The position numbers were made by a program, and so were the translations under genes. Positions 21,526 through 60,742 of a DNA stretch of 64,000 nucleotides are shown piece by piece; the stretch's first letter is position 1; each line of letters opens with the position of its first letter. The DNA lies in IMG/VR virus record IMGVR_UViG_3300036770_007539, positions 1-64,000 of that record, one strand, 5' to 3'. The notes under the pieces are model-generated. The model did not search any database, was not told the DNA's origin, and saw only the letters and a list, made by a program, of their open reading frames with translations.

Positions 21526-21612
21526 ATGAGTCTTTTAACAACAATTTTTATCGGAACTATTGTTTTTGTTTTTTTATCATTTTATTTAATAAATAAGATG
21601 TTTGAAGATTAA
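21526..21612 (+). CDS. Small 28-aa membrane peptide (not in ORF track)
   Basis: MSLLTTIFIGTIVFVFLSFYLINKMFED*; TAATG coupling upstream and stop 1 nt before the ligase ATG. Confidence 0.5.
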   Translation: MSLLTTIFIGTIVFVFLSFYLINKMFED

Positions 21613-21613
21613 T

Positions 21614-22648
21614 ATGCAAGATTTGGCAAATATAAAACAAATATCTCAAATTATACCGCACCCTAACGCTGACGCTTTAGAAATTGCCATTATTGAAGGC
21701 TGGCAATGTGTAGTTAAAAAAGAGCAATTTAAGACCAATGATTTGGTAGTTTATATTGCTATTGATACGTTGCTTAATAGCAAACCTTCTTGGGCTAGCT
21801 TTCTTGAGCAACGCAATTGGAGAGTTAGACTAATTAAGTTGAGAGGCGAATTGTCTTATGGACTAATTTTGCCTCTTTCTGTTTTGCCAGAAAACACACC
21901 AATTGAATTAGACTCTGACGTTTCTAATCTACTAGGAGTAGTTAAATATCAGAAACCGGAATCAAATGCTGGCAAACATTCTCCAGGAAAAACTAAGCTT
22001 AATTCGTTTCCATCTTTTACTGGAATGCATGTTACTGATGAGGTTAATCTTCAGTCAAAGCTAAGAATGTTAAATGAGTTGCTTGGCAAGCCATATTATA
22101 TAACTACAAAGTGGGATGGAAGCAGCATGACAGCAATTTATACTGCTACCCCATCAAATCCTGATGGAGAATTTGTACTTGCCTCTAGAAATCGTTGGTT
22201 GGAATTTTCTGACGAAGCCACTGATAATTGGAGCAAAGCAGCTAAAAAATATAATCTTCCAGAGATTTTAAAGAATTCTAATTATGGATTTCAATGTGAG
22301 TTAGTAGCTCCTGGAATTCAATCAAACCGTGCAGGGCTATCAGAGGTAGAAATTAGAATTTTCAATTTATTTGATAAGACTACTAGAAAATATGCAAGCC
22401 TAAAAGAGTTGCAAGATTTTTGCAGTTCTACTGGATTGCCCATAGTAACTTTACTAGAATCTGGTGAGAGTTTTAATTACAGTTTAGAACAATTGCTACA
22501 ATTAGCCAAAACAGTTAAATATCCAAACAATTTTCCAGCAGAGGGCATTGTGTTGCGTCCTCAGGTTGGATTTTATAGTGAAACTTTAAAAGATAAATGG
22601 TCTTGTAAAGTTTTGAACAGTGATTATCTTTTAAAGTTTGAAGAGTGA
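21614..22648 (+). CDS. ATP-dependent RNA ligase (DRB0094/Rnl2-like with N-terminal OB domain)
   Basis: PHPNADALE N-domain; motif I TKWDGSS, III QCEL, IV AEGIVLR, V SCKVLNSDYL. Confidence 0.9.
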   Translation: MQDLANIKQISQIIPHPNADALEIAIIEGWQCVVKKEQFKTNDLVVYIAIDTLLNSKPSWASFLEQRNWRVRLIKLRGELSYGLILPLSVLPENTPIELDSDVSNLLGVVKYQKPESNAGKHSPGKTKLNSFPSFTGMHVTDEVNLQSKLRMLNELLGKPYYITTKWDGSSMTAIYTATPSNPDGEFVLASRNRWLEFSDEATDNWSKAAKKYNLPEILKNSNYGFQCELVAPGIQSNRAGLSEVEIRIFNLFDKTTRKYASLKELQDFCSSTGLPIVTLLESGESFNYSLEQLLQLAKTVKYPNNFPAEGIVLRPQVGFYSETLKDKWSCKVLNSDYLLKFEE

Positions 22649-26239: not shown

Positions 26240-27223
26240 ATGGAAGAAATAAATACAGTACTTTCAAATCTAAATCTAGATGCGCAATGCATTGATTATC
26301 AATCAACTAACTCTTCGGAGTTTTATGATATCAAACTTGGCTATAAATGCTCAGTAAAGAAATTTTCAAATTCTCTCAAAGAGCTTGAATTTAGACTAGG
26401 TTCTCATAATTCATTGTTTTTAACTTTACTGCCTAAGAGCGGTTGTGTAAGAATTCAAAATTTGAAAAATAATCTTCAGATTAAATTTGAAGATGTATAT
26501 TCCAAAAAAGAAGGGCTTCTCCCAGTAATCCTAGGCAAGGATTACTATGACAATATTATTTTTTCAGATTTTTCTAATCATCCCCATACTTTAATTTCTG
26601 GAACAACTGGATCTGGAAAAAGTATGGCTCTGCATAACATTATTTGTAATTTATTACTAAAAAATAATACAGAACTATATTTATCTGATTCTAAAGGAGT
26701 AGAATTTATTCCTTATGAACGTTTTTCTAAAATTTCAGAAATAGCTAAAACATATGATGAAAATATATATATGCTTAAAAAAATCCATTATATTATGGAG
26801 AGTAGGTTTGCAATAATGCGCTCTAAAAATCAAAATAATTTCCAAAAATTATTTGGAATCAATCCAATTGCGATTATAATTGATGAACTTTCGGATTTAT
26901 TGATTCAAGATAAAGATTCTGAATTAAAAAATATTTTACTATCCATTGCTCAAAAATCTCGAGCTGCTGGAATTTTTTTAATTGCGGCAACACAGCGTCC
27001 GTCAGTTGATATTCTATCTGGGACCATCAAAGCCAATTTCCCGGCTAGAATAGCCCTTAAAGCAGCCTCCCCAGTTGATTCCAAAGTAATCCTAGACCAG
27101 ACCGGAGCTGAAATGCTGAAAGGATATGGTGATGCAATTATTAACAATGAAAAATATCAATTTCTTAGATTTAAATTTCCACTAATTAATCATCAATCAA
27201 TAATTCAAAAAATTAAAAAATAA
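26240..27223 (+). CDS. FtsK/SpoIIIE-family ATPase domain protein (no TM segment, no gamma domain)
   Basis: HPHTLISGTTGSGKS, IIIDELSDL, AQKSRAAGIFLIAATQRPS, KANFPARIA, GAEMLKGYGD. Confidence 0.9.
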   Translation: MEEINTVLSNLNLDAQCIDYQSTNSSEFYDIKLGYKCSVKKFSNSLKELEFRLGSHNSLFLTLLPKSGCVRIQNLKNNLQIKFEDVYSKKEGLLPVILGKDYYDNIIFSDFSNHPHTLISGTTGSGKSMALHNIICNLLLKNNTELYLSDSKGVEFIPYERFSKISEIAKTYDENIYMLKKIHYIMESRFAIMRSKNQNNFQKLFGINPIAIIIDELSDLLIQDKDSELKNILLSIAQKSRAAGIFLIAATQRPSVDILSGTIKANFPARIALKAASPVDSKVILDQTGAEMLKGYGDAIINNEKYQFLRFKFPLINHQSIIQKIKK

Positions 27224-30412: not shown

Positions 30413-30485
30413 TGGGGAGTCGCCTAGTGGTTATGGCAGCGGACTTTGAATCCGCCATTCGTGAGTTCGAATCTCACCTCCCCTG
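30413..30485 (+). tRNA. tRNA-Gln (anticodon TTG)
   Basis: Cloverleaf: anticodon arm GCGGA-CTTTGAA-TCCGC, T arm GTGAG-TTCGAAT-CTCAC; U1:U72 mismatch; CCA not encoded. Confidence 0.9.
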
Positions 30486-30507
30486 CTAACTTTCTGCAAT
30501 TAAAGCG

Positions 30508-32371: not shown

Positions 32372-32459
32372 AGAAGGGTGCCAGAGTGGTCGATCGGGCT
32401 TGATTGGAAATCAAGTGTACGTGAATAGCGTACCGGGGGTTCGAATCCCCCCTCTTCTG
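32372..32459 (+). tRNA. tRNA-Ser (anticodon GGA)
   Basis: CTTGA-TTGGAAA-TCAAG anticodon arm, long variable arm GTACG..CGTAC, GGGGG-TTCGAAT-CCCCC, G73; CCA not encoded. Confidence 0.92.
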
Positions 32460-33287
32460 CTAATTTTTAAGTAAATTATTAATTGTTACTGCATCAACAA
32501 AGAATGACATATTTGGAACTGCCGGTCTAAAAAAAGAACATATTCCAATTAATTTCCCATCTATGTCAAAAGCTCCGCCTCCAGAGTTGCCCATATAAAT
32601 CGGAGCTGTAATATGAACTAATTTTTGTTGATATCCTGTGGGATTTATTTCAGTTCTAAAACCTGAAATAATTCCAGTAAAATATGTAAATTCAACTCTT
32701 GCAGGATGCCCAACAATATGAACTTTTTCACCAATTTTTCCATTAGATCCAGATACTTCAACAAAACTATCTGAGCTGTAATCTAATGTTTTTAAAATCA
32801 TAATATCGTTATTATTGTCAAATTTTATTATTTTTGCTTTTTTAGTTGGTGGATTTTCTAAATTATAAGAATTTGATATTTCACCAAAAGTTTTAAATGA
32901 AACTTCTAACCCAAGCATATCATCAAGGTTAGGAGTGTAACTTAATGCTTTAATTATTTTAATTAAATCTTCTAATGTTTTTTCTTCTTTTTTAATAATT
33001 TCTTCGCTAATTTTAGCATCTTCTGGTTCTGGAATTAAGCTTTCTCCACAGTGCCTTGCGCTAATAATTATTTCTGGAGAAATAAAAACTCCTCCACAAA
33101 AAGTAGAATATTTTTTATTTTCTTCTGACGGGCGTAAAAACGCAACAGAGCTATTCTCTAATTTATAAACTAGATTTGTATTTTGCTGTTGCTCTATAGA
33201 TGCAACTTTTACATGCGACGGAATTGAACAACAACCAAGTAAGAAAAACAAACAAAAAAGAAAAGATATCTTGTTTTTCAAAGCCAC
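32460..33287 (-). CDS. Trypsin-like (S1) serine protease, probable lipoprotein
   Basis: Lipobox LLGC; CGGVFI, SARHC, NDIMIL, GNSGG; start may be TTG at 33281 after AGGAG. Confidence 0.85.
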   Translation of the reverse strand: MALKNKISFLFCLFFLLGCCSIPSHVKVASIEQQQNTNLVYKLENSSVAFLRPSEENKKYSTFCGGVFISPEIIISARHCGESLIPEPEDAKISEEIIKKEEKTLEDLIKIIKALSYTPNLDDMLGLEVSFKTFGEISNSYNLENPPTKKAKIIKFDNNNDIMILKTLDYSSDSFVEVSGSNGKIGEKVHIVGHPARVEFTYFTGIISGFRTEINPTGYQQKLVHITAPIYMGNSGGGAFDIDGKLIGICSFFRPAVPNMSFFVDAVTINNLLKN

Positions 33288-33798: not shown

Positions 33799-34827
33799 AT
33801 GATTAAGACCGATGTAGTTACCGATCTGCTATGGGGAGATAATGGTAAAGGAAAAATTACTCATTCGCTAATGAAAAATAATAAATATGATTATTGTCTG
33901 AAATTAGCAGGTTCTGCTAACGCAGGACATACCATTTATCATAATGGTGATAAATTTGTCACTCATTTGCTTCCAGCTGGAATATTTTTTAATATTCCCT
34001 CGATTATTGGCAGAAACTGCTTGGTTCATCCAGAAACTTTGTTTGCAGAAATTGAACAGCTGCAAAATCAATTTAATAAACATGAAGATCTGAAATCTAT
34101 TGATATTCAATCTTTAGTGAAGATTGATAAAAATACTTGTATTATTACAGACGATCATATTTACGAAGATTCTAAAGATACTATTATTGGATCAACTAAA
34201 CGTGGGGTCGGTCCTGCTGCTCGTGATAAATATGCTAGAACGGCAGTTCAAGTTCAAAATGTTGATTCATTAAAGGGATTCGTTGTAGATTTTCCAGAAA
34301 TAATCTATCAAGAACAAAATGCTTCTATCCTCGGAGAAGGAGCTCAAGGTTTTTATTTGGATGTTAATTTTGGTGATTATCCTTATGTAACTAGCACTCA
34401 CTGCTCTTTAGCAGCTGTTCCGTTGAGCGGAATTCCAATTCGATCAATTGACCGAATTTTTGGAGCAATTAAAATTTATGCTACTTATGTTGGAAAAAAA
34501 TCCTTTCAAGGAGAAGATTCTAGATTCGACATGATTGCTGAGGCAGGGTCTGAGTTTGGTTCTACTACTGGAAGAAAAAGACAAGTCAACTGGTTAGACT
34601 TAGACAAGTTAATTTATGCTATTAAGGCTAATGATGTAACTGATTTGATTATTTCTAAAATTGATATTTTTAGAAAATTAAATATCTTTGTCTTAGTTAA
34701 AGATAATAAAATCATTGAGTTTAATAACGAAAAAAATATGAAAACATACATTCATGATGTCTTGTACGATTCAAGATGTAATTCCATTAAGAATATAGTG
34801 TTTTCAGAATCTCCACATGACATCTGA
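33799..34827 (+). CDS. purA: Adenylosuccinate synthetase (short form)
   Basis: WGDNGKGK, NAGHT, IGSTKRGVGP, GEGAQG, YPYVTS, EFGSTTGRKR, SKID. Confidence 0.9.
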   Translation: MIKTDVVTDLLWGDNGKGKITHSLMKNNKYDYCLKLAGSANAGHTIYHNGDKFVTHLLPAGIFFNIPSIIGRNCLVHPETLFAEIEQLQNQFNKHEDLKSIDIQSLVKIDKNTCIITDDHIYEDSKDTIIGSTKRGVGPAARDKYARTAVQVQNVDSLKGFVVDFPEIIYQEQNASILGEGAQGFYLDVNFGDYPYVTSTHCSLAAVPLSGIPIRSIDRIFGAIKIYATYVGKKSFQGEDSRFDMIAEAGSEFGSTTGRKRQVNWLDLDKLIYAIKANDVTDLIISKIDIFRKLNIFVLVKDNKIIEFNNEKNMKTYIHDVLYDSRCNSIKNIVFSESPHDI

Positions 34828-34882: not shown

Positions 34883-34928
34883 ATGGGGGATGCCTCTAGG
34901 TGGGGCTAGTTGTTTAGAGAGGAAAAAA

Positions 34929-37106
34929 ATGTCAAAGCTAATTGTTCAAAAAGTTCAGACTCAGACGGACGGATCAATTAAGGATCACCAATATGGGATT
35001 GGTGATGTGGGTCTTGTTTTGGAAATTCTTCGAAATAAGCTTTATAAAGATCCTATTCTCGCTGTAGTTCGTGAGTATATCACCAATGCTCGTGATGCTC
35101 ATGTGGAAGTAGGAAAAGCAGATGTTCCAATTGTGGTTCATTTGCCTTCTTATGAATCCATGTATTTCAAAGTCCAAGATTTCGGTCCTGGTCTTTCACC
35201 TGAGCGAATTGAAAAGATTTTTTGCAATTATGCATCTTCTACTAAGCGCAATTCTGAAGACCAAGTAGGTTATTTCGGAATTGGCAGCAAGAGTGCATTT
35301 GCTTATTCTGACTCTTTTACCATTACATCAGTGGTAGATGGTAAGATTCGAACTTATTCATCTTATATTGATGAGTCTCGGCGTGGCAAGATTTCTTGTC
35401 TTTATGAAGCTGATACCGATCAGCCCAATGGAACAACTATTATTATTCCTGTAAAAAAATACGACCAAGATCGTTTTCTAGACAAGCTTCGATTTATTAC
35501 GGAATTTTGGAGTGTTCGTCCCAGCGTTTTTAAGGATGATTCGGAGTTTAAGATTTCATATGTAAATGAAAAGACGGTTTTTTCTGGCGATAATTGGAAA
35601 CTTGCTCGCAATCCCGATTATGATTTTCGAGGAACCTATGCAATCATGGGCGGAATTCCCTATGCTATTGATATGAATACTCATTTCGAGTCGCATCCTG
35701 CCCGTAATTTCTTCAATTATTCTTGCGTCCGAATTAATTTTAATAATTCTGATCTTAGCCTTGCCGCTTCTAGAGATTCACTTCACTATGATGCTAGAAC
35801 GATCAGGAACATTAATGATAAGCTTGATTCAATCATCAGCGAAATTAACATCAGGATTTCGGAGCAAATCTCACAGGAACCATCTTATAAAGATGCCCTC
35901 ATCAAATACAATGAAGCCTTGGACGCATTTCCTGAACTAAATAGAATCATTGGAAATGTAATCTACGATTCAAAACCAGTTCATAGGAATCCCAAGATTT
36001 CTATGTTTGGGAACAATTCTAGACTTACTTGGTATTCAAAAGTTGTAATGTCCAATGGCTTCAAAGACATTAAAGTCAAAACTGTTAATTATAAAAATCC
36101 AGGCGCAGACGCAGATTTTGCTAATATCTTGTCTAGAAAAGATACGGTAATCATTTTTAATGACCTAGCCGTTACTGACCTGAAAAAGTATGCAACAACA
36201 TTGTTCAATGATTCTAACGCATTGAACAATGTTGTTGTCCTGAGCATCGCAGAAACCAAAGATGATGTATCTAAGCACAAACATCTTTGGTTTGCAGAAG
36301 ATATTTGCTATGCAAAAATCTCAGAAATTACTCCAGGCAAGACGGTTCGACAAAGCAATCGCAGGTCTCTAACTCATAAACAAAATCTATTTCTTTATAG
36401 CTTTGATCCCTCATCTTCCAGGGTAGATTGTGGTCGTCATCTTGTGGAAGTTTCTCCAAATGAAACAATTGCATATTTTCTTTATGACCTAAAGACAAAT
36501 GCGCCTGTTAATCTAAGCAAAAATATTCTATCTTGTATTAAAAGTCTTGAATCCGCTTTGGGAATGAGGGTTTTTGCAGTGGCGACATCAAAGTCTGAAA
36601 AGATTCCATCAAATTGGAAATATATTGATGATGTTGTGACTGAGAAATTCAATTCCATCATGGAGCAATACGGTCTTTCTTCCCTTCAAGATTACTTGAA
36701 TTGCATGGCTATTAGGGAAAAAGTAGAACATTACAATGTTAATATCTTTAAGTCTCTTTTTAAAGACCAAATGAATAATAATAATTTTATTTCCTCATAC
36801 CTGAATAAGGTTCAATTTGCCCAAGACAAGTTCTCTTATGTCTGGGATAATTGCAATCTTAAAACTTTGGCAAAGCATATTAATAAATACCATTACCTTG
36901 AAACGGCTTCTATTCCAGCCTCAGAGGATTATGACTTTAATATTTTTTTCAATTCAGCAATTCAACAATATCCTATGCTTAAATTCTGTCCAGTAAGTTC
37001 ATATACTTCTGAAAAAGACATTAAAAGCGTCAATGATTACATTGAAATGGTCGATCGTCTTAACAAAGACGCGCATGTGTGTATTCATATGCCTTTGTGC
37101 GCTTGA
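34929..37106 (+). CDS. rIIA: rIIA-like protein (GHKL ATPase N-terminus; probable start 34929)
   Basis: LYKDPILAVVREYITNARDAH, VQDFGPGL, ASSTKR, GYFGIGSKSAFAY, GTTIII, SRDSL.Y; followed by rIIB. Confidence 0.9.
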   Translation: MSKLIVQKVQTQTDGSIKDHQYGIGDVGLVLEILRNKLYKDPILAVVREYITNARDAHVEVGKADVPIVVHLPSYESMYFKVQDFGPGLSPERIEKIFCNYASSTKRNSEDQVGYFGIGSKSAFAYSDSFTITSVVDGKIRTYSSYIDESRRGKISCLYEADTDQPNGTTIIIPVKKYDQDRFLDKLRFITEFWSVRPSVFKDDSEFKISYVNEKTVFSGDNWKLARNPDYDFRGTYAIMGGIPYAIDMNTHFESHPARNFFNYSCVRINFNNSDLSLAASRDSLHYDARTIRNINDKLDSIISEINIRISEQISQEPSYKDALIKYNEALDAFPELNRIIGNVIYDSKPVHRNPKISMFGNNSRLTWYSKVVMSNGFKDIKVKTVNYKNPGADADFANILSRKDTVIIFNDLAVTDLKKYATTLFNDSNALNNVVVLSIAETKDDVSKHKHLWFAEDICYAKISEITPGKTVRQSNRRSLTHKQNLFLYSFDPSSSRVDCGRHLVEVSPNETIAYFLYDLKTNAPVNLSKNILSCIKSLESALGMRVFAVATSKSEKIPSNWKYIDDVVTEKFNSIMEQYGLSSLQDYLNCMAIREKVEHYNVNIFKSLFKDQMNNNNFISSYLNKVQFAQDKFSYVWDNCNLKTLAKHINKYHYLETASIPASEDYDFNIFFNSAIQQYPMLKFCPVSSYTSEKDIKSVNDYIEMVDRLNKDAHVCIHMPLCA

Positions 37107-37132
37107 CATGTTATTATTCTGAGTTATATATT
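37103..37132 (+). promoter_or_regulatory. Possible sigma70 promoter for rIIB
   Basis: TTGACA with TATATA/TATATT at N16/N18. Confidence 0.5.
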
Positions 37133-37168
37133 CACTGTTGGGTTCCAAAAAAACAAGGAGTTTACTAT

Positions 37169-38053
37169 ATGAAAATGCCATACACAATTACAAACAATTC
37201 TGTTACACTCGTTCGCAACGGTATGCCAGTTACTGTTTTGCGAGAGCATCCTTCTTTTGATTTTATTCTTGAAGCCATTAAAGCAGATGATTGGAATCAG
37301 GTAATTGATGCACTTGATCGCAAAACAACTGTAAAAGTTATTACAGAAGGAGAAATGGAAGAGAGGAATGGAAGCCTTTTTGTAAAGCTTGATAATGATT
37401 CTTGGTGGCAAGTTCCTGTCGACCTTGGCAAACACATTCTTGATTTTTATTATAAGAAGCTTCCGTATCAGCCCTGGGTAGCTTTTGCCAAAAAGCTTCA
37501 ACAAAATCCATCATATCGATCAGTTCAAGAACTTTTTCGATTCTTGAATGCAAATCAATTTACGCTTTCTGATAATGGCAACTTTATTGCCTATAAAAGG
37601 GTAAAAGAAGACTTTAAAGACATCCATTCTGGAACATTTGATAATTCTGTTGGTACTACAGTTTCAATGTCCAGAAACGAGGTTGATGAAGACTCTGATA
37701 GAACTTGCTCTAATGGATTGCATGTAGCTGCGTTTGATTATGCTTGCAACCATTTTGGAAGCAGCAATAACACTACGGATAAGCTTCTTTATGTGGAAGT
37801 AAATCCCAAAGATGTAGTTGCAGTTCCCAAAGATTATAATAACCAGAAAATGAGGGTATGCGAATACACGGTGCTTGGAGTTTGTGATTATGAATTCAAG
37901 GCTCCACTATATTCTCACTCTGATGGTTTTTATGATCCGTCGGAAAGGTATAATGAGGAATATGAAGATTGGGGATCATATCACAGTGAATGCGAAGAAT
38001 GTGATGGATGCGATGAGTGCGATGATTGTGATGATTGTGACTGTCAGTATTGA
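37169..38053 (+). CDS. rIIB: rIIB-like protein (probable start 37169) with Cys/acidic C-terminal tail
   Basis: NPSYRSVQELFRFL, GNFIAYKRV, TCSNGLHV, VNPKDVVAVPKDYNNQKMRVCEY; SD AAGGAG. Confidence 0.9.
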   Translation: MKMPYTITNNSVTLVRNGMPVTVLREHPSFDFILEAIKADDWNQVIDALDRKTTVKVITEGEMEERNGSLFVKLDNDSWWQVPVDLGKHILDFYYKKLPYQPWVAFAKKLQQNPSYRSVQELFRFLNANQFTLSDNGNFIAYKRVKEDFKDIHSGTFDNSVGTTVSMSRNEVDEDSDRTCSNGLHVAAFDYACNHFGSSNNTTDKLLYVEVNPKDVVAVPKDYNNQKMRVCEYTVLGVCDYEFKAPLYSHSDGFYDPSERYNEEYEDWGSYHSECEECDGCDECDDCDDCDCQY

Positions 38054-39052: not shown

Positions 39053-39125
39053 GTCGTTTTAGCTCAGCTAGCAGAGCACCTCATTGGTAATGAGGAGGTC
39101 ATGGGTGCAACTCCCATAAACGGCT
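39053..39125 (+). tRNA. tRNA-Thr (anticodon GGT), non-canonical D and T loops
   Basis: GTCGTTT/AAACGGC acceptor stem, CCTCA-TTGGTAA-TGAGG, T loop TGCAACT, D loop AGCTAGCA. Confidence 0.85.
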
Positions 39126-39877
39126 CAAAGTTCTAGTTCTTCTTCTAGTTTCATTAAAACTAGCCTAGACATTCCAAGATTGCTTTTTTCTTTGTCTAGA
39201 ACGACATAGATAAATAGATTATCTTGTTTTAATACGAAGGTAACTATGTGATAGTTGTTATTTAAGTTAATAACAATATCTTCAATTTTATCTTTAATGT
39301 TTAAGTTAGTTAAGAACTTCTTGTGAGATTTAACTACTTCAACCATGTAAGCGCAATATAATTCAAATTCAGAGGATTTATCTGAGTTTTGAATTATAGG
39401 CATTCCAGTTGTTATGTCTACAATGGAAGCGGCTAGTACGCCATCAAGCTCCATAATGGTGTTAAATTTTTCTTTTATGCTTTTAAAATAAGAAGAGCTT
39501 GGTTTTCTTGATGTAGAGCCTGATGAAGATTGTTCAGCTTCTGGCTCTAAGGCATAATTTTTAATTTTTCCCTCATCTAACAAGACGTAATATTCTAGAA
39601 TAAGTTCGGTCCATAATTTGTTAATTGACTCTACTTCTGGTAAAACATTGGGAGAAACTTTAAAAGTTCCATCCTCCCAAGTTAACATTTCATAAAAAGC
39701 ATCAATTCCAAAATTATTGGTAGTGGTAGCGTGAAGAACTCTTCCAGTAGAAACCCAAACTTCACCAGAAAATTTCTTATGAGTTATAGTTATATGAGCA
39801 GATGCTTGACTTAGTATGTAGAATTGAATTATATCTACCAGTGTCTCGGTAGAAATCTCGCCTTGAAATTTATTCAT
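39125..39877 (-). CDS. DUF4388 (PatA_N-like) domain fused to a roadblock/LC7-like domain
   Basis: FQGEI...LVDIIQ...GEVWVSTGRVLHA...AFYEMLTWEDGTF; C-terminal LDGVLAASIVDITTGM...IEDIVI...LFIYVVLDKEKSNLGMSRL. Confidence 0.8.
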   Translation of the reverse strand: MNKFQGEISTETLVDIIQFYILSQASAHITITHKKFSGEVWVSTGRVLHATTTNNFGIDAFYEMLTWEDGTFKVSPNVLPEVESINKLWTELILEYYVLLDEGKIKNYALEPEAEQSSSGSTSRKPSSSYFKSIKEKFNTIMELDGVLAASIVDITTGMPIIQNSDKSSEFELYCAYMVEVVKSHKKFLTNLNIKDKIEDIVINLNNNYHIVTFVLKQDNLFIYVVLDKEKSNLGMSRLVLMKLEEELEL

Positions 39878-40316
39878 TTTAGCCTTGTTAAGAGTGATTT
39901 CCGCAACTTACTCTTACTATAATATGTAATTTTATTCGGAGAAATTTATGAACAATAATTATCAAATCGTTAAAAATGAAGTAGTTAATGCATACTCTGA
40001 TTGCAATGAAATCAGTAATTCTTCAAGAAACTTAGATTTTTTAGCCTCTAGACCTGTTTCGGTAAAAGAAGCTGAGGAAATTATGTCTCTTGCCGTTGAA
40101 GGGGGGTATAATAATTTTTCATCAGAGCTAATTTCCTTGCTCCCTCAAGATGCTAAAGTTTGGATTGCAAGAGAAGGGAGCGTCTGTGTTTACTTAGATA
40201 AACCATTAGATGAAGAAGCTTTAAGCGAATTAGGATGCGATGAATACGATCAGGTATCATCGGACAATGATACCGCTTGTGGAAATTACCGAATCTGGTG
40301 GGATTGAGGAGCAAAT

Positions 40317-41548: not shown

Positions 41549-42031
41549 GTGATGCTTAAATTCTCTAAAATAAGCCTTGATAAAGGTGAAAGTTCTCACT
41601 ATTCGTCCAAAGTGGCAAATATCTTGCTCTATTGCGAAGATGACGAGACTGTTTTTTTAATCAAAAGGTCTGATAATGTTAGTCATCCTGGTCGATGGTG
41701 TGCTCCGGGCGGGCATGTAGAAAATGATGAGTCTTTTGCAGAGGCTGCTATTCGCGAATCTAATGAAGAAGTAGGTGGGCTTCCAAAGATACAAAAGAAG
41801 TTAGATCAAAATATCATCATTGATGATAATAAGAAAATTGTTACTTATGTTTGCTTGGTACCTTTAAAATATAAAGAAAAATGGACACCAGTTCTAAACG
41901 ATGAATCTGAAGAGTGCAAATGGTTTCATGTTAATGAAATTCCAGAGAAGGCATTTGATACTATTAAAAATATAATTTCCGACTTGCCTTCTTTGCTTAG
42001 GAAAGCAAAATACGCATCTTATCTTAAATAA
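41549..42031 (+). CDS. NUDIX hydrolase
   Basis: Nudix box GGHVENDESFAEAAIRESNEEVG; AATAATTTCACAT-N6-GTG start. Confidence 0.9.
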   Translation: MMLKFSKISLDKGESSHYSSKVANILLYCEDDETVFLIKRSDNVSHPGRWCAPGGHVENDESFAEAAIRESNEEVGGLPKIQKKLDQNIIIDDNKKIVTYVCLVPLKYKEKWTPVLNDESEECKWFHVNEIPEKAFDTIKNIISDLPSLLRKAKYASYLK

Positions 42032-42567
42032 GATAGAACGCTTCTGATTAATCTTACTCTTTCTTGCATAGATTCGCTGTTAATTTGAATGTAGTTCAAA
42101 TTAAATAACTCAAACATGAATTTAATATTGGCATCAATGGCTACCATTTGGTCCCAGTTAACAGATTCTCTGACTCCATCGTTTTTCATTGTGGCTTTGC
42201 TGGGCTTGACTAAGAAGATGACTACATCTTTATCTTTTAAGGATTTAATGTAATTTTGGCACTTCTCATCATTGATTAATTTATGGAGTTGAGTGCCATG
42301 CTGAGCCATGTAAGCTAAATTATCGAAGCTTCTATCTGAAACAAATGATAAATGTTTTGATTCTTCATTAATTTGGCGATAGAAAACTTCTGTTTGATAT
42401 TGGTCAATGGCTTCTAAATTGACTCTTAAGGTTTCTAAGGATATTTCTTTCTCAGCTAAAACAGTTCTAGCTACTTCACTGAGGAATGGAAGATTATATT
42501 CTTTAGAAGTAAGCCTAGCTAAGGTAGATTTTCCTGAAGCGTGGCAACCGGTGAAATAAATTCTCAT
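42019..42567 (-). CDS. P-loop nucleotide kinase-like protein (AAA_28/NadR-type)
   Basis: IYFTGCHASGKST, EVAR, FVSDRS.DNLAY. Confidence 0.75.
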   Translation of the reverse strand: MRIYFTGCHASGKSTLARLTSKEYNLPFLSEVARTVLAEKEISLETLRVNLEAIDQYQTEVFYRQINEESKHLSFVSDRSFDNLAYMAQHGTQLHKLINDEKCQNYIKSLKDKDVVIFLVKPSKATMKNDGVRESVNWDQMVAIDANIKFMFELFNLNYIQINSESMQERVRLIRSVLSYLR

Positions 42568-42615: not shown

Positions 42616-43365
42616 ATGAAAAAATTAATTATCTTTGATTTGGACGGCACACTTGCCGAATCTAAATCTCCTATAACTAAATCTATGAGCATTGCTCTAA
42701 AGAAATTACTGCAAAATTATTCAGTTGCAATAATTTCAGGTGGAGCATTTCTTCAATTTGAAAAGCAATTTTTAAATAATTTATCTGTACCCGAAGATTT
42801 ATTATATAATTTATACTTGTTTCCCACTTGCGCCACATCATTCTTTAAATTTAAAGACAAACAATGGCAAAAAGTTTATTCTGAAGAGCTTTCAATTGAA
42901 GAAAAAGAAAAAATACTACAATCTTTTAAATTTACTTTTGAAAAAGTAGGTTTTGAAATTCCTAAAAAATTACTTTATGGAAACATTATTGAAGATCGAG
43001 GAACTCAAATTACTTTTTCTGCTCTAGGGCAAGATGCCCCTGTAGATCTTAAAAAGACTTGGGATCCATCGCATTTAAAAAGATTAAAGATGATTGAAAT
43101 ATTACAAGAGTATTTGCCTGATTTTGAAATTAGATCGGGCGGCTCAACTTCTATTGATATTACTAAAAAAGGAATCGATAAAGCTTATGGAATTGCTAAA
43201 ATTCAAGAATATTTAAAATTTTCTATTGACGAGATGCTCTTTATAGGTGATGCTATATTTCCAGGCGGCAATGATTATGCTGTAGTTTCAACGGGGGTGG
43301 AGTGCATTTCAACTCCAAGCCCAGAAGAAACGCAATTCATAATTTTAGAGCTATTAAAGAATTGA
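42616..43365 (+). CDS. HAD-IIB phosphomannomutase-like protein
   Basis: FDLDGTL, ISGG, IEDRGTQITFS, GGSTSIDIT..GIDK, FIGDAIFPGGND. Confidence 0.85.
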   Translation: MKKLIIFDLDGTLAESKSPITKSMSIALKKLLQNYSVAIISGGAFLQFEKQFLNNLSVPEDLLYNLYLFPTCATSFFKFKDKQWQKVYSEELSIEEKEKILQSFKFTFEKVGFEIPKKLLYGNIIEDRGTQITFSALGQDAPVDLKKTWDPSHLKRLKMIEILQEYLPDFEIRSGGSTSIDITKKGIDKAYGIAKIQEYLKFSIDEMLFIGDAIFPGGNDYAVVSTGVECISTPSPEETQFIILELLKN

Positions 43366-43390
43366 CGCCAGCTCTCATCGGGGCTATGCT
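43362..43390 (+). promoter_or_regulatory. Sigma70-type promoter
   Basis: TTGACG-N17-TATGCT inside an imperfect TTGAC...GTCAA inverted repeat. Confidence 0.7.
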
Positions 43391-43421
43391 GTCAACTAAT
43401 GTTCCTACTAACAGGGGATTT

Positions 43422-44876
43422 ATGATTAAAACTTGGTCAAAATATCAATCAGATATTTTTAATTTTATTAAAAATAATTCAGACAATTTAATTGTTGAAG
43501 CTTTGGCAGGCAGTGGAAAAACTTCTACAGCTGTTGAAGCATTAAAATATGTTTCTCCAGGCGAGAAAAGTATTTTCGTAGCATTTAATAAGAAGATTGC
43601 TGACGAATTACGAACTAGGGTTCCTGATTATGTCTCTACAGGAACGCTTCATTCTGTCGGATTAAAACATATTTCTAAGACTTATAAATCTGCTGTCGTG
43701 GCAGATAAGATGACTTTAATTTACAAGAAAGTCCTAGGAGAAGATAAAGAAAAAAACGAATTAATTTATCTTTTAACCAAAGCCGTTTCACTTTGTAAGT
43801 CATCTTTGGTTGATAAATATGAAGATATTGATGATTTGTTAGATCGTTTTGACATTGAACCTCCACACGACGTTGAACGTGCAACTTTTATTAATCATAT
43901 TATTTTCGGGTTAGATGCCTGTTTAAGGAAAACATCGTCTATTGATTTTGATGATATGATTTATTTTCCAGTAAAATTGAATATTCCAATTGATCAATAT
44001 GATAATGTCTTTGTAGATGAGGCGCAGGACTTAAATCCTGCGCAAATTGAATTCGTGCTTAAATTAGTTAAGCAACCAATTCCATCAAAAAGAAAATCTA
44101 AGAAAAATGATGGCAGTAAAGGTCGTTGCGTTGTCTTTATGGACCGCAACCAAGCAATTTATGCCTGGAGAGGAGCTGATTCAAATTCCTATGACAAGTT
44201 CAAGGAAAGACTCAGTGCGAAGGCGCTCCCGCTGTCGATCACATACCGATGCCCCCACAGCGTAGTAAGAGAGGCACAGAAGCTTGTACCCCATTTAGAA
44301 GCTGCTCCAGGAGCATCAGAAGGCTCCGTAGACTGGCAAGAGTATGACAAGCTAATTTCTAACGCTCCAATCGGCTCTTATATTATTTCTAGGACTAATG
44401 CTCCTTTGATTAGGACTGCTTTAAAGTTGATTAGGCAGAAAACTCCTTGCGCAATTCTAGGCAGGGACATTGGTGATAACATTAATAATTTAATTAAGGC
44501 TTCAAAAGCTAAAAAAGTAGATAAGCTACACGCTTATATTGAGAAATGGAAAAATAAAGAGATGTCGAGACTGCTAAGTGTAGGCAAAGATATTAATCAT
44601 ATTTTAGATAAGTATGAATGTCTGGAGGCTTTGATGGAGGGTTGCGACACAGTAGATCAAGTTAAACAAAATATCGCCTCTCTCTTTATAACCAAAGACC
44701 CTAATCGCATTGTTACTCTGGGATCTACCCATCAAATGAAGGGTTTGGAATCAAAAGAAGTGTATATGTTCATTAATACATATAATGAATCTTCTCAGGA
44801 AGAAAAAAATCTTAAATATGTAGCAATTACTAGATCAAAAAACAATTTACATTACGTTAAATATCCTAAAAAATGA
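43422..44876 (+). CDS. UvrD/REP-family SF1 helicase (probable start 43422)
   Basis: ALAGSGKT, AFNKKIA, VDEAQD, DRNQAIY.WRGA, TYRCP, THQMKGLE, YVAITRSK. Confidence 0.9.
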   Translation: MIKTWSKYQSDIFNFIKNNSDNLIVEALAGSGKTSTAVEALKYVSPGEKSIFVAFNKKIADELRTRVPDYVSTGTLHSVGLKHISKTYKSAVVADKMTLIYKKVLGEDKEKNELIYLLTKAVSLCKSSLVDKYEDIDDLLDRFDIEPPHDVERATFINHIIFGLDACLRKTSSIDFDDMIYFPVKLNIPIDQYDNVFVDEAQDLNPAQIEFVLKLVKQPIPSKRKSKKNDGSKGRCVVFMDRNQAIYAWRGADSNSYDKFKERLSAKALPLSITYRCPHSVVREAQKLVPHLEAAPGASEGSVDWQEYDKLISNAPIGSYIISRTNAPLIRTALKLIRQKTPCAILGRDIGDNINNLIKASKAKKVDKLHAYIEKWKNKEMSRLLSVGKDINHILDKYECLEALMEGCDTVDQVKQNIASLFITKDPNRIVTLGSTHQMKGLESKEVYMFINTYNESSQEEKNLKYVAITRSKNNLHYVKYPKK

Positions 44877-58777: not shown

Positions 58778-60742
58778 ATGTCCAGCATACTTCTAATTGT
58801 AGAATCTCCAACAAAAGCAAAAACTCTTTCTAAATATTTAGGAAAAGAATATAAAATACTTTCTAGTTTTGGTCACATGTTTGACTTGGATACTAAAAAA
58901 GCAATGTGGGGAATTGATGTTAAAAATAATTTTGAAACTTATTATTCTTTGTTGCAAGACAAGAAGAATCAATTAGAAAATATTAATAAAGCTGCTAAAG
59001 AAGCCGATCTAATATTATTAGCCTCCGACCCTGATCGAGAGGGGGAGGCAATTTCTTGGCACCTGTCAGAAGAATTAAAAAAATTTAAAAAACCAATTAA
59101 AAGAGTCTTATTTAAAGAATATACTAAAAAAGCAATTCTTGAATCTATTAAATCATCTAGAGAGTTGGATGAACAGCTTTACAATGCACAGCAAGCAAGA
59201 AGAGTTATTGATCGAATTGTTGGATTTGGTGTTTCTGGCTATCTTAGAAAAGTTGAAGATTCTAAGACTTCTTTGTCGGCAGGGAGAACTCAATCTGTTG
59301 CCCTTAAATTAATTGTAGAAAGAGAAAAAGAGATAGAAGAATTTAAACCAGAAACTTATTATACGGTCACAGCTTCGGGTACAAAAGATAAAATTGAATT
59401 TGAAATTAAATACTCTGACAAGATTACAAATTCTAAAAAAGCTGAAAAAGTTTTAGAATCTTTAAAATCTGGTGTTAAAGTTTCAAAATTAGACAAATCT
59501 CAAAAAAATAAAAGCCCACTTCCACCTTTTGACACAGCTTCTTTGATGGGTACGTCTTCATCTATGCTTGGCTTTGGCAGTGCCAAGACTATGCAGCTAG
59601 CTCAAGCATTGTATGAAAAGGGTATGATTACTTACATGAGGACTGACTCTTTTAGAGTTTCTTCGGAATCAATCACCCAGGCTAGAGATTATTTGTCTGC
59701 TCAGCATTATGCATTACCTACCAAGCCTAATTTATATGGCGCATCTGCCGAGGCTCAAGATGCACACGAAGCAATTAGACCAACAGATATAAACGCCACT
59801 CCAGATGTATCTAATCTTCCTCAAGATGAAGAAAAATTATATGATTTAATTTGGAAAAGATTTCTAGCTTCCCAATTGAAGCCTGCTATTTATGATGCTA
59901 CCGTTGTAACATTTAAATCTTCAGACGGTACTGAATTTAAATCTCATGGAAGGATATTAACATCCGAAGGATGGCTATCTCTTTTTAAAGACACAGAGGA
60001 TAAATCATCAGATAGTATACTTCCAAGTTTAGAAGTTGGAGACTGCCCAAAACTTAAAAATGAAAAATTTACAGAAAAACAAACCAAACCACCTTCCAGA
60101 TATTCTGAAAAGGCAATTCTAGAAGAACTTAAAAAAAGAGGAATTGGTCGACCCAGTACTTATTCAGCTATAGTTTCTAAAATCCAAGAAAGAAATTATG
60201 TTGAAAATAAAGGAAAGGTTCTAGCTCCAACTTCGCTTGGGTTTGAAGTTTTCAATCATTTAAATTCAAAATTTAGCTTCATGAACTATGATTATACTGC
60301 CAGTATGGAGCAGTCTTTGGATAAAATTGAATCGGGCTCATTATCTTATGTTGATTTTTTAAATAATTTTTATAAAGATTTTTCTATAGAATTAGTTAAA
60401 ACAGAAAAAGAAATTAATAAATCAGCAATAGATAAATGCCCTAAATGCAGCTCTGATAATAAAGAATATATATTTGGCTCAACTCATTATGTATATTGTA
60501 GTACATTTCCAAAATGTGGATATAAATCGAGTTATTCTAAGCAAAATACTGATATAGTAGCTAGTGAAGATAAATTTACTGCGTTTCAAAGTTGCCCAAA
60601 ATGTAGTGGGTATCTGAGAGCGTACCACTCAAACAGTCAGTGGTCACTTTCATGTGTAAGGAAAGAATGTGATGGTAAATTATCTCCAACAGAAAAACAA
60701 GTAAATTTCTATAATAATTTATTAAAATTTAAGAAAGGTTAA
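58778..60742 (+). CDS. topA: DNA topoisomerase I (type IA)
   Basis: IVESPTKAKT, SDPDREGEAI, SAGRTQS, ITYMRTDS, DAHEAIRPT, GIGRPSTY, C-terminal Zn ribbons. Confidence 0.95.
   Translation: MSSILLIVESPTKAKTLSKYLGKEYKILSSFGHMFDLDTKKAMWGIDVKNNFETYYSLLQDKKNQLENINKAAKEADLILLASDPDREGEAISWHLSEELKKFKKPIKRVLFKEYTKKAILESIKSSRELDEQLYNAQQARRVIDRIVGFGVSGYLRKVEDSKTSLSAGRTQSVALKLIVEREKEIEEFKPETYYTVTASGTKDKIEFEIKYSDKITNSKKAEKVLESLKSGVKVSKLDKSQKNKSPLPPFDTASLMGTSSSMLGFGSAKTMQLAQALYEKGMITYMRTDSFRVSSESITQARDYLSAQHYALPTKPNLYGASAEAQDAHEAIRPTDINATPDVSNLPQDEEKLYDLIWKRFLASQLKPAIYDATVVTFKSSDGTEFKSHGRILTSEGWLSLFKDTEDKSSDSILPSLEVGDCPKLKNEKFTEKQTKPPSRYSEKAILEELKKRGIGRPSTYSAIVSKIQERNYVENKGKVLAPTSLGFEVFNHLNSKFSFMNYDYTASMEQSLDKIESGSLSYVDFLNNFYKDFSIELVKTEKEINKSAIDKCPKCSSDNKEYIFGSTHYVYCSTFPKCGYKSSYSKQNTDIVASEDKFTAFQSCPKCSGYLRAYHSNSQWSLSCVRKECDGKLSPTEKQVNFYNNLLKFKKG

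What the first reader, a model, noticed from the sequence alone, without database searches (positions are those of the whole stretch)
39125..39877. DUF4388-roadblock fusion: possible modulator of MglA/MglB polarity switching
Seen: an N-terminal DUF4388/PatA_N-like domain and a C-terminal roadblock/LC7-like domain, on a reverse cassette with the putative late motif. Established: roadblock proteins (MglB, MglC) regulate the MglA GTPase that sets myxobacterial polarity and reversals, and DUF4388 is expanded in Myxococcota. Inference: a second motility or polarity effector.
Basis: partly seen in the sequence, partly recalled or inferred. Interest (0 to 1): 0.65.

Follow-up and report, generated by a model that had tools for sequence, protein, structure and literature searches.

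The report
Huge-phage PATAN–roadblock regulator without receiver
A roughly 420-kb uncultured phage carries a conserved 250-residue protein that is the PATAN + roadblock "output half" of a common family of bacterial response regulators without their phospho-receiver domain, so it probably acts on the host's pilus or polarity signalling without any signal; this role is inferred, not shown.

Summary
The ORF at 39125-39877 (-) is real and encodes 250 aa. Residues 5-103 are a PATAN/DUF4388 domain (Pfam 54 bits, cut-off 25). Residues 109-133 are a disordered linker that evolves neutrally. Residues 130-250 have a roadblock/LC7 fold (Z 15-17 to MglB, Asgard roadblocks and LAMTOR) but give no Pfam Robl_LC7 sequence hit.

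The setting is not myxobacterial. The window is the first 64 kb of a 301-kb virus record (about 71% complete, 35% GC) from subsurface and freshwater metagenomes. The gene sits beside rIIA/rIIB as a lone antisense gene, and no late motif was found.

About 20 homologues (36-97% identity), where context could be read, lie on similar phage contigs. Both domains are under purifying selection (dN/dS about 0.1-0.2).

A whole-library HMMER search links the module full-length to many cellular proteins, mostly REC-PATAN-roadblock response regulators. The phage protein is therefore a receiver-less copy of that output module.

The record holds no Ras-like GTPase, second roadblock, REC or PilB gene, so any partner must be a host protein, and the host is unknown. 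Published work shows that a PATAN domain alone binds the pilus motor PilB1 and is sufficient for output. Action on MglA is possible but untested. Verdict: new member of a known kind in a new (phage) setting, of moderate interest.

The parts
39125..39877 (-). Complete CDS, 250 aa (P0001): PATAN-linker-roadblock protein
   Evidence: ORF list and translation. About 20 phage-clade homologues. dN/dS 0.14-0.23 overall.
39569..39865 (-). PATAN / DUF4388 domain (residues 5-103), compact form without the alpha-helical insertion
   Evidence: Pfam PF14332, 54.3 bits against cut-off 25, profile positions 1-121 covered by 99 residues. Modelled alone at pLDDT 93.5. No solved structure resembles it: best Z 4.3, no Foldseek hit at E<=1e-3.
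39479..39553 (-). Disordered Ser/Lys-rich linker (residues 109-133), variable in length among relatives (about 25-100 aa)
   Evidence: pLDDT below 50 for residues 109-133. Length variation and the DFSDL-like motif, present in 13 of 17 relatives but absent here. dN/dS about 0.9-1.5 over residues 104-129.
39128..39490 (-). Roadblock/LC7-fold domain (residues 130-250): a1 130-142, b1 147-154, b2 160-165, a2 168-191, b3 200-205, b4 208-215, b5 218-228, a3 234-247
   Evidence: Model. Foldseek probability 1.0 and TMt 0.8-0.86 to 7f8m, 7yh1, 6izw_C, 1j3w. VIA-align Z 15-17. Sub-threshold Robl_LC7 or LAMTOR5 hits in 11 cellular family members. Family signature residues are retained.
39878..39947 (.). 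70-bp divergent intergenic region holding the gene's upstream and leader sequence, with a conserved AAGAGT-N14-ACTCTT inverted repeat (about 39889-39914) and a weak AAGG ribosome-binding site
   Evidence: Sequence. Conserved in L010 and L004. The fold is not better than shuffles, z -0.38. No promoter-consensus site was called in this region.
39053..39126 (+). tRNA-Thr(GGU), convergent with the gene and overlapping its stop codon by 2 nt
   Evidence: ARAGORN. Rfam tRNA 60.8 bits. The same arrangement occurs in relative L010.

Best explanation
Shown. The gene encodes a two-domain cytoplasmic protein: a PATAN domain, a flexible linker and a roadblock-fold domain. It belongs to a clade found, wherever context could be read, in related huge phages. 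Over its whole length it is homologous to the C-terminal two-thirds of a large family of bacterial proteins, most of which carry an N-terminal receiver (REC) domain and some a Ser/Thr kinase or FHA domain. The phage copy has no receiver. The phage record encodes no receiver, small GTPase, second roadblock or pilus ATPase.

Inferred. The protein is a signal-independent (constitutive) copy of a host response-regulator output module, made during infection from its own antisense transcription unit. It probably dimerises through helix a2 and strand b3, as roadblock domains do. It would then bind the host partners of the cellular regulators: most likely the type IV pilus extension motor (PilB/PilC) through PATAN, and/or an MglA-type small GTPase or another polarity factor through the roadblock platform. 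That would lock or switch off pilus-based motility and polarity. Plausible pay-offs are exclusion of superinfecting pilus-dependent phages or immobilising the infected cell.

In the phage clade the start of helix a2 reads Y-C-A-Y-M, where cellular relatives have the small residues A-A-A-G-N. The roadblock face may therefore be retuned in partner specificity or act as a dominant-negative.
For: Domains. Phage setting: a 301-kb virus record with rIIA/rIIB, a PurZ-like AdSS, helicase, NUDIX and tRNAs around the gene. The contexts read (three relatives of the main clade, plus the more distant P0023) are phage-like, three of the four with rIIA/rIIB, and in three of the four the gene is antisense to its neighbours. 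Purifying selection on both domains, neutral linker. Whole-library HMMER: 4679 hits at E<=1e-3. Of 133 non-phage hits, 111 have DUF4388 and 61 have Response_reg. Examples are REC-PATAN-Rbl (P0021, P0022, P0026) and Pkinase-PATAN-Rbl (P0039). Nearly all family-wide conserved residues are kept in the phage protein. No REC, Ras, GPN, Robl_LC7 or T2SSE genes in the record. Cellular context: the closest cellular relative, P0021, lies beside a PAS histidine kinase, a coiled-coil protein and an Arf-family GTPase-domain protein (24.6 bits against cut-off 22.3). A stand-alone homologue of the C-domain (P0121) lies in a cluster with a 189-aa GTPase and a roadblock gene. [quoted passage not shown] PATAN genes neighbour mglA/mglB (PMC4316618). 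An MglB roadblock dimer binds MglA through its two-helix a2 face (PMC3199381). Phages are known to encode PilB inhibitors (Tip, Aqs1, Zip) for superinfection exclusion (PMC11656802).
Against: No partner has been identified and the host is unknown, so it is not known whether the host has type IV pili, PATAN regulators or an MglA-type GTPase. PF14332 rang in only 3 of 14 control genomes (Synechococcus, Thermus, Deinococcus). The phage's strong Shine-Dalgarno sites and its tubulin's only isolate match (Bacillus phage G, 23.5% identity) could point to hosts where PATAN is not known. The roadblock domain has no sequence-level Robl_LC7 match. Its a2 start differs from cellular relatives, so the ancestral partner may not be retained. 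The GTPase association in cellular loci rests on two loci only. No expression data exist: no RNA run holds the stretch.
Confidence: 0.4

Rival explanations
1. Phage-internal cell-biology factor. The roadblock dimer and PATAN act as an adaptor for the phage's own machinery, for example positioning replication or assembly sites together with the phage-encoded tubulin-family GTPase, rather than targeting host motility.
For: The same 301-kb record encodes a tubulin/PhuZ-like protein (PF00091, E 2.6e-18; phrog_4733). Roadblock and longin domains are generic GTPase and motor platforms (PMC3747258, listed). The gene lies among replication and nucleotide-metabolism genes.
Against: No roadblock-tubulin interaction was seen in the papers read here. 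The tubulin gene is about 165 kb away. Co-occurrence could not be tested, because the two related virus records are 21-28% fragments without tubulin. The cellular relatives are signalling proteins carrying REC or kinase domains.
Confidence: 0.12
2. Host-signalling decoy unrelated to motility. The receiver-less module interferes with another pathway run by REC-PATAN-roadblock or GTPase/roadblock systems (development, stress, conservon-like switches, or a defence pathway), or it sequesters a host kinase or partner.
For: The cellular family has diverse input domains: REC, Ser/Thr kinase, FHA, TPR, pentapeptide. PatA itself controls heterocyst patterning rather than motility. Roadblock/GTPase pairs also occur in the actinobacterial conservon. 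The altered a2 surface fits a decoy.
Against: All experimental data on PATAN output so far point to the pilus motor. No PADLOC scan was run, so a defence link is untested.
Confidence: 0.25
3. One reading: an MglB/MglC-like accessory of a myxobacterial MglA polarity switch, encoded by a Myxococcota genome or a myxophage.
For: Roadblock fold similar to M. xanthus MglB and MglC (6izw_C, 6hjm, 7ct3). M. xanthus has more than a dozen PATAN proteins.
Against: GC is 35% and the record is a virus record. There is no mglA-like gene in it. Only 12-15% identity to MglB. The phage clade is separated from the GC-rich cellular relatives by a long branch. Samples are subsurface and freshwater metagenomes.
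Confidence: 0.05
4. Decaying passenger gene or a chance ORF with no function.
For: No PHROG family, no isolate-phage homologue and no expression data.
Against: The frame is intact in about 20 diverged homologues. dN/dS is about 0.1-0.2 in both domains. Family signature residues are retained. Models are confident.
Confidence: 0.02

Closest known systems
Cellular REC-PATAN-roadblock response regulators (uncharacterised; e.g. P0021, P0022, P0026 found here) and stand-alone PATAN-roadblock proteins (PATAN associated with Roadblock domains: Makarova et al. 2006, recalled from the abstract, paper not held)
   Same: Full-length profile match of both domains in the same order (E 1e-47 to 1e-25). Shared signature residues: G6, Q18, H49-A50, D101-E102; D145-G146, V153-D154, G158-M159, E180-V-V, I198-E-D-I, Y209-H210, F222, Y224, N233-L234, R238.
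   Different: No receiver or other input domain. AT-rich phage clade on a long separate branch. The start of helix a2 reads Y-C-A-Y-M instead of A-A-A-G-N. Encoded by a huge phage.
PatA-type (PATAN-REC) regulators PixG, PixE, TaxP of Synechocystis and PatA of Anabaena
   Same: PATAN domain (PF14332). In PixE the PATAN domain alone binds PilB1 and gives the output.
   Different: In those proteins REC follows PATAN and there is no roadblock domain. Here roadblock follows PATAN and there is no REC. No partner is known here.
MglB / MglC (roadblock GAP and paralogue for the Ras-like GTPase MglA) and CvnB of the conservon
   Same: Same fold with the extra C-terminal helix a3 (Z 15.6 to M. xanthus MglB 6hjm_A, 15.0 to T. 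thermophilus MglB 3t1r_A).
   Different: 12-15% identity, no Pfam Robl_LC7 hit, fused to PATAN, and no cognate GTPase gene nearby or anywhere in the 301-kb record.
Phage-encoded type IV pilus inhibitors Tip/Aqs1/Zip (Pseudomonas phages)
   Same: Proposed role only: a phage protein that disables the pilus motor and so gives superinfection exclusion (PMC11656802).
   Different: Those are small helical peptides of temperate phages. No similarity in sequence or fold is expected, and none was tested. The analogy is functional and unproven.

Membership tests
PATAN / DUF4388 (Pfam PF14332) | Sequence match to the family HMM above the gathering score | tested here: met
   54.3 bits against cut-off 25, E 1.8e-14, residues 5-103 covering profile positions 1-121. 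56.5 bits in the six-frame search.
PATAN / DUF4388 (Pfam PF14332) | Optional alpha-helical ('alpha-clip') insertion described for many PATAN domains (recalled from Makarova et al. 2006) | tested here: not met
   Only 99 residues span the 121 profile positions, and the model shows no inserted helical bundle. The insertion is optional, so membership stands.
Roadblock/LC7 (Pfam PF03259; MglB, LAMTOR, dynein LC7) | Sequence match to the Robl_LC7 HMM | tested here: not met
   No hit even at E<=10 for residues 125-250, and none in the six-frame search of the record. There is only transitive support: sub-threshold Robl_LC7 (4) or LAMTOR5 (7) hits in cellular members of the same family, and a JGI COG-type label on P0010.
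Roadblock/LC7 (Pfam PF03259; MglB, LAMTOR, dynein LC7) | alpha-beta-beta-alpha-beta-beta-beta sandwich fold | tested here: met
   DSSP order a1-b1-b2-a2-b3-b4-b5-a3. The top 13 rows of the Foldseek-independent search are all roadblock-fold proteins or domains at Z 13-17 over 100-123 aligned residues. Foldseek probability 1.0.
Roadblock/LC7 (Pfam PF03259; MglB, LAMTOR, dynein LC7) | Dimerisation through a2 and b3 to form a two-helix platform | not tested
   No homodimer prediction or experiment was made. Inferred from the fold only (PMC3199381).
MglB-type GAP of MglA | Cognate MglA-like Ras-superfamily GTPase encoded beside it or in the same genome | tested here: not met
   No PF00071 (Ras) or PF03029 (GPN/ATP_bind_1) match in the 301-kb record. 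The record is about 71% complete and the host genome is unknown.
MglB-type GAP of MglA | Binds MglA-GTP and stimulates GTP hydrolysis | not testable with these tools
   Needs biochemistry with the host's GTPase, and the host is unknown.
PatA-type response regulators (PATAN-REC) | CheY-like receiver domain in the same polypeptide | tested here: not met
   No Response_reg hit in the protein or anywhere in the record. The open frame leaves room for at most 10 more residues.
Cellular (REC-)PATAN-roadblock module family defined here by profile A1 | One continuous profile match across PATAN, linker and roadblock domain, with the family's conserved residues | tested here: met
   Profile positions about 3-259 match residues about 130 to the end of many 360-450-aa cellular proteins at E 1e-47 to 1e-25. 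Conserved positions are shared. The phage sequences form their own clade.

The most novel reading that the evidence does not exclude
A lineage of huge phages captured the output half of a bacterial PATAN-roadblock response regulator, dropped the receiver and remodelled the roadblock a2 face. The result would be a signal-independent mimic that seizes the host's pilus motor or Ras-like polarity GTPase during infection. That would make it the first viral roadblock-type GTPase or motor regulator, and a natural dominant probe for the still unknown function of the PATAN-roadblock module.
Probability: 0.3. Interest if true: 0.7.

Novelty: new member of a known kind. Interest (0 to 1): 0.42.

Why it matters
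PATAN and bacterial roadblock domains are widespread, but only a handful of cases are understood (PixE/PixG with PilB1; MglB with MglA). The combined PATAN-roadblock module found here in many response regulators has no assigned function. A phage-borne, receiver-less version is a natural 'always-on or always-blocking' allele. Expressing it in a host or surrogate and fishing for its partners could show what the whole module binds. It would also add a new class, a mimic of a host regulator rather than a small peptide, to the ways phages manipulate pili, motility or polarity. In the literature held here, no paper mentions DUF4388 in connection with a phage-encoded protein, and none describes a phage roadblock protein. 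The family is absent from PHROGs and from isolate phage genomes.

Tried and rejected
1. Complex prediction of two copies of the roadblock domain (residues 125-250) with M. xanthus MglA (Swiss-Prot MGLA_MYXXD) returned 'no answer' (score 0.01, mark 0.32).

2. Sequence routes to the C-domain found nothing: Pfam, PHROGs and NCBIfam on the whole protein and Pfam on residues 125-250, and a PDB sequence-profile search with A1 (0 hits at E<=10). Only the fold searches and the whole-library HMMER search resolved it.

3. Isolate phages: megablast of 10 kb and tblastn of the protein found no match.

4. Word-based homologue searches with the protein and with the profile reached only the phage clade. The genome-contig scan gave two MAG proteins matching the PATAN half only.

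5. Host identification failed. There is no psbA and no Terminase_6C hit to anchor the phage. The rIIA, AdSS, topoisomerase and tubulin tblastn hits are distant and scattered over many host phyla.

6. Late motif or promoter. T4-type TATAAATA is absent near the gene and not enriched. The sigma-70 scan is at chance level. K-mer enrichment and a TATAGT survey gave no convincing shared element. The conserved leader inverted repeat folds no better than shuffles. Rfam finds only tRNAs.

7. Fold of the PATAN domain: a confident model but no solved look-alike, so structure adds nothing to function.

8. Tubulin co-occurrence in related virus records was uninformative, because both records are small fragments.

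9. Read laying was not used, since no RNA run holds the stretch.

Full report
**What is there.** The window has 30-38% GC throughout. It is densely packed with short, mostly + strand ORFs. The genome search identifies it as bases 1-64000 of a 301,007-bp IMG/VR virus record that CheckV rates 71% complete, which implies a genome of roughly 420 kb. A near-identical 120.8-kb record is rated 28% complete, which agrees. My ORF call on the whole record gives 370 genes, 291 on the + strand, 93% coding and 35.4% GC.

Around the finding lie:
- a PurZ/adenylosuccinate-synthetase-like gene (33799-34827);
- rIIA (34890-37106) and rIIB (37079-38053);
- a NUDIX hydrolase (41549-42031);
- an AAA_28/thymidylate-kinase-like gene (42019-42567, -);
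- a DNA helicase (43302-44876).

Three tRNAs are present. Public runs holding the stretch are subsurface metagenomes, and weaker partial matches come from freshwater metagenomes. This is a huge uncultured phage, not a Myxococcota genome.

**The gene.** 39125..39877 (-) is an ATG-started ORF of 250 aa (P0001). The frame is open for only 260 codons. It is a single reverse-strand gene between + strand neighbours, as are eight other isolated reverse genes in the window. At its 3' end it converges on tRNA-Thr(GGU) at 39053-39126, overlapping it by 2 nt, and this arrangement is kept in a 68%-identical relative.

Upstream is a 70-bp divergent intergenic region with a conserved inverted repeat (AAGAGT-N14-ACTCTT) and a weak AAGG ribosome-binding site. 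The hairpin is not more stable than shuffled sequence.
- TATAAATA is absent there and not enriched in the window;
- sigma-70-like sites are at chance level;
- the enriched intergenic k-mers of the genome are not near this gene.

**Domains.** Residues 5-103 match Pfam DUF4388/PATAN well above threshold. Modelled alone with a 28-sequence alignment, the domain folds with pLDDT 93.5. It has no solved structural relative: best Z is 4.3 and there is no Foldseek hit at E<=1e-3.

Residues 109-133 are predicted disordered. Among relatives the linker varies from about 25 to about 100 residues. In 13 of 17 relatives, but not in this protein, it carries a DFSDL-like acidic motif.

Residues 130-250 have no family match by sequence. 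They fold as a1-b1-b2-a2-b3-b4-b5-a3.
- Foldseek's top 50 hits are all roadblock-fold proteins: Asgard roadblocks, M. xanthus and T. thermophilus MglB, MglC, LAMTOR/MP1-p14 and dynein LC7. Probability is 1.0 and target TM 0.8-0.86 for the best hits.
- The Foldseek-independent search of 48,161 chains gives Z 15-17 at about 2 A over 115-121 residues for the top seven rows. Unrelated profilin- or GAF-like folds follow from Z about 11.6 down to about 9.

The refutation criterion 'C-terminus is not a roadblock fold' is not met.

**Is it a real, selected gene?** The word-based search found 16 homologues at 41-97% identity, and the profile search added two more. The whole-library search added more distant phage-type members P0020, P0023 and P0128.

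Four contexts could be read (P0008, P0013, P0016, P0023). All lie on phage-like contigs, three of them with rIIA/rIIB. In three of the four the gene is antisense to its neighbours. Against four relatives, dN/dS is 0.09-0.30 in PATAN, 0.10-0.13 in the roadblock domain and about 0.9-1.5 in the linker. Synonymous sites are near saturation.

**What family is it?** I ran the costly HMMER search of 1.84 billion representatives because the word search stalled inside the phage clade, and because the claim of 'no close cellular relative' rests on absence. It gave 4679 hits at E<=1e-3 and 44 at E<=1e-30.

Below the phage clade come many proteins of 360-450 aa in which the whole profile (positions about 3-259) matches residues about 130 to the end. 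Pfam shows the extra N-terminal domain is a response-regulator receiver. One protein has a Ser/Thr kinase instead, and others are multi-PATAN proteins or stand-alone 120-aa homologues of the C-domain.

- Across 133 non-phage hits: DUF4388 in 111, Response_reg in 61, sub-threshold LAMTOR5 in 7 and Robl_LC7 in 4, with single cases of Pkinase, FHA, TPR and pentapeptide.
- In a quick ML tree, the 21 AT-rich stand-alone phage-type sequences are separated from all 94 cellular-type sequences by a long branch (1.43, SH-aLRT 99). Composition bias may exaggerate this.

Nearly all positions conserved across the cellular family are kept in the phage protein, in both domains. There is one notable exception. 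The first five residues of the conserved part of helix a2 are A-A-A-G-N in cells and Y-C-A-Y-M in the phage clade. In MglB, a2 forms both the dimer interface and the GTPase-binding face, and replacing small a2 residues (A68/A72 in T. thermophilus) with Arg weakens MglA binding ten-fold (PMC3199381). I did not make a residue-level structural superposition. The correspondence of these positions to the MglB patch is therefore a lead, not a result.

**Partners.** The 301-kb record has no Ras-family or GPN-type GTPase, no second roadblock, no receiver domain and no PilB-type ATPase beyond P-loop noise. Any partner is therefore a host protein, or lies in the missing approximately 29% of the phage.

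The record does encode a tubulin-family protein about 165 kb away. That supports a minority alternative, a phage-internal positioning role.

Two cellular loci support a GTPase link for this family:
- P0021, the closest cellular relative, on a 71% GC contig, sits beside a PAS histidine kinase, a coiled-coil protein and a 358-aa protein with an Arf-family G domain just over threshold.
- The stand-alone C-domain homologue P0121 sits in a cluster with a 189-aa GTPase and a roadblock gene.

The literature agrees:
- PATAN genes recur near mglA/mglB homologues (PMC4316618).
- In Synechocystis the PATAN domain alone binds the pilus ATPase PilB1, localises to the membrane and suffices to reverse phototaxis (bioRxiv 10.1101/2021.06.11.447907).
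- Phages are already known to encode PilB-binding inhibitors that give superinfection exclusion (PMC11656802).

**Most likely mechanism (inferred, confidence about 0.4).** The protein is a receiver-less, hence signal-independent, copy of a host response-regulator output module. It probably dimerises through the roadblock domain and engages the host's pilus motor and/or a small polarity GTPase, locking pilus-based behaviour during infection.

The rivals, with the tests that would separate them, are listed in the Rival explanations section:
- an adaptor for the phage's own tubulin-based organisation;
- a decoy in a non-motility signalling or defence pathway;

**Comparison and novelty.** PATAN fused or linked to roadblock domains in cellular genomes has been known since the PATAN domain was defined. 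I recall this from the abstract of Makarova et al. 2006, which is not held in the library. It is cited for the mglB neighbourhood in PMC4316618. The architecture is therefore not new.

What appears new is a conserved clade of this module in huge phages, always without an input domain:
- no PHROG family;
- no isolate-phage homologue;
- in the searchable library, no paper mentions DUF4388 in connection with a phage-encoded protein, and none describes a phage roadblock protein.

I file it as a new member of a known kind in an unusual setting and rate interest at 0.42. It is worth a bench test, because it could reveal what the PATAN-roadblock module binds. Nothing here shows an unprecedented mechanism.

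**Limits.**
- The host is unknown. Strong AGGAG-type ribosome-binding sites and TTGACA/TAnnnT promoters upstream of many genes suggest a host that uses Shine-Dalgarno sites, but nothing more specific emerged.
- There are no expression data.
- The single complex prediction gave no verdict and is recorded only under Tried and rejected.

Noticed in passing
window 33799-34827 (+): Adenylosuccinate-synthetase homologue whose best PHROG is the PurZ-type '2-aminooxy adenylosuccinate synthetase' (phrog_1211, E 1e-58; Pfam Adenylsucc_synt E 2e-68). Its best phage tblastn hit is the 735-kb uncultured phage LR756501 at 34% identity. The phage might make 2-aminoadenine (Z) DNA, or it may simply carry a PurA. 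Partner genes (DatZ/MazZ) were not looked for.
   Followed up: partly
G000:C1 about 204691-206010 (+), locus L011:1342-2661; outside the window: The same virus record encodes a 439-aa tubulin-family protein (PF00091, E 2.6e-18; weak PhuZ PHROG). Its only isolate-phage match is Bacillus phage G at 23.5% identity.
   Followed up: partly
window 34890-37106 and 37079-38053 (+): An rIIA/rIIB pair immediately upstream of the finding. The AdSS-rIIA-rIIB-(small ORFs)-PATAN/roadblock order is conserved on related contigs L004 and L005.
   Followed up: yes
window 39053-39126 (+): tRNA-Thr(GGU) converges on the PATAN-roadblock gene and overlaps its stop codon by 2 nt. The same overlap is seen in relative L010 (6746-6819). 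Two more tRNAs lie at 30413-30486 (Gln) and 32372-32460 (Ser).
   Followed up: yes
window about 39889-39914 (-), and L010, L004: A conserved inverted repeat, AAGAGT-N14-ACTCTT, lies in the leader between a TATTAT/TATAGT-like element and the ribosome-binding site of the gene. The predicted hairpin is no more stable than shuffles (z -0.38), so conservation may reflect the divergent promoter region instead.
   Followed up: partly
alignment A1, linker columns (relatives P0005-P0017): 13 of 17 family members carry a short acidic-hydrophobic motif (consensus DFSDL) in the otherwise unconserved linker. The window's protein and its three closest relatives have lost it. It may be a short linear binding motif.
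   Followed up: no
P0001 residues 1-108 (window 39554-39877, -): The PATAN domain gives a very confident model (pLDDT 93.5) but no significant match to any solved structure (best Z 4.3). PATAN apparently has no experimental structure in the PDB copy searched.
   Followed up: yes
G000 intergenic regions (whole 301-kb record): A GC-rich intergenic repeat (core GGGCTCGCTCCCT and its reverse complement) is about 10-fold enriched in intergenic DNA of this AT-rich genome. It may be a terminator stem or a regulatory repeat. It is not near the finding.
   Followed up: no
window 58778-60742, 26240-27223, 21602-22648 (+): Topoisomerase I-like (phrog_13226, annotated topA in matching phages), FtsK/SpoIIIE-like ATPase and RNA ligase genes, which are typical huge-phage cargo.
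   Followed up: partly
L014:1984-3060 (-) and L014:3144-4472 (-), a 71% GC metagenome contig: Beside the closest cellular REC-PATAN-roadblock gene lie a 358-aa protein with an Arf-family G domain (24.6 bits, cut-off 22.3), a 442-aa coiled-coil protein and a PAS histidine kinase. This may be an uncharacterised polarity or GTPase module.
   Followed up: partly
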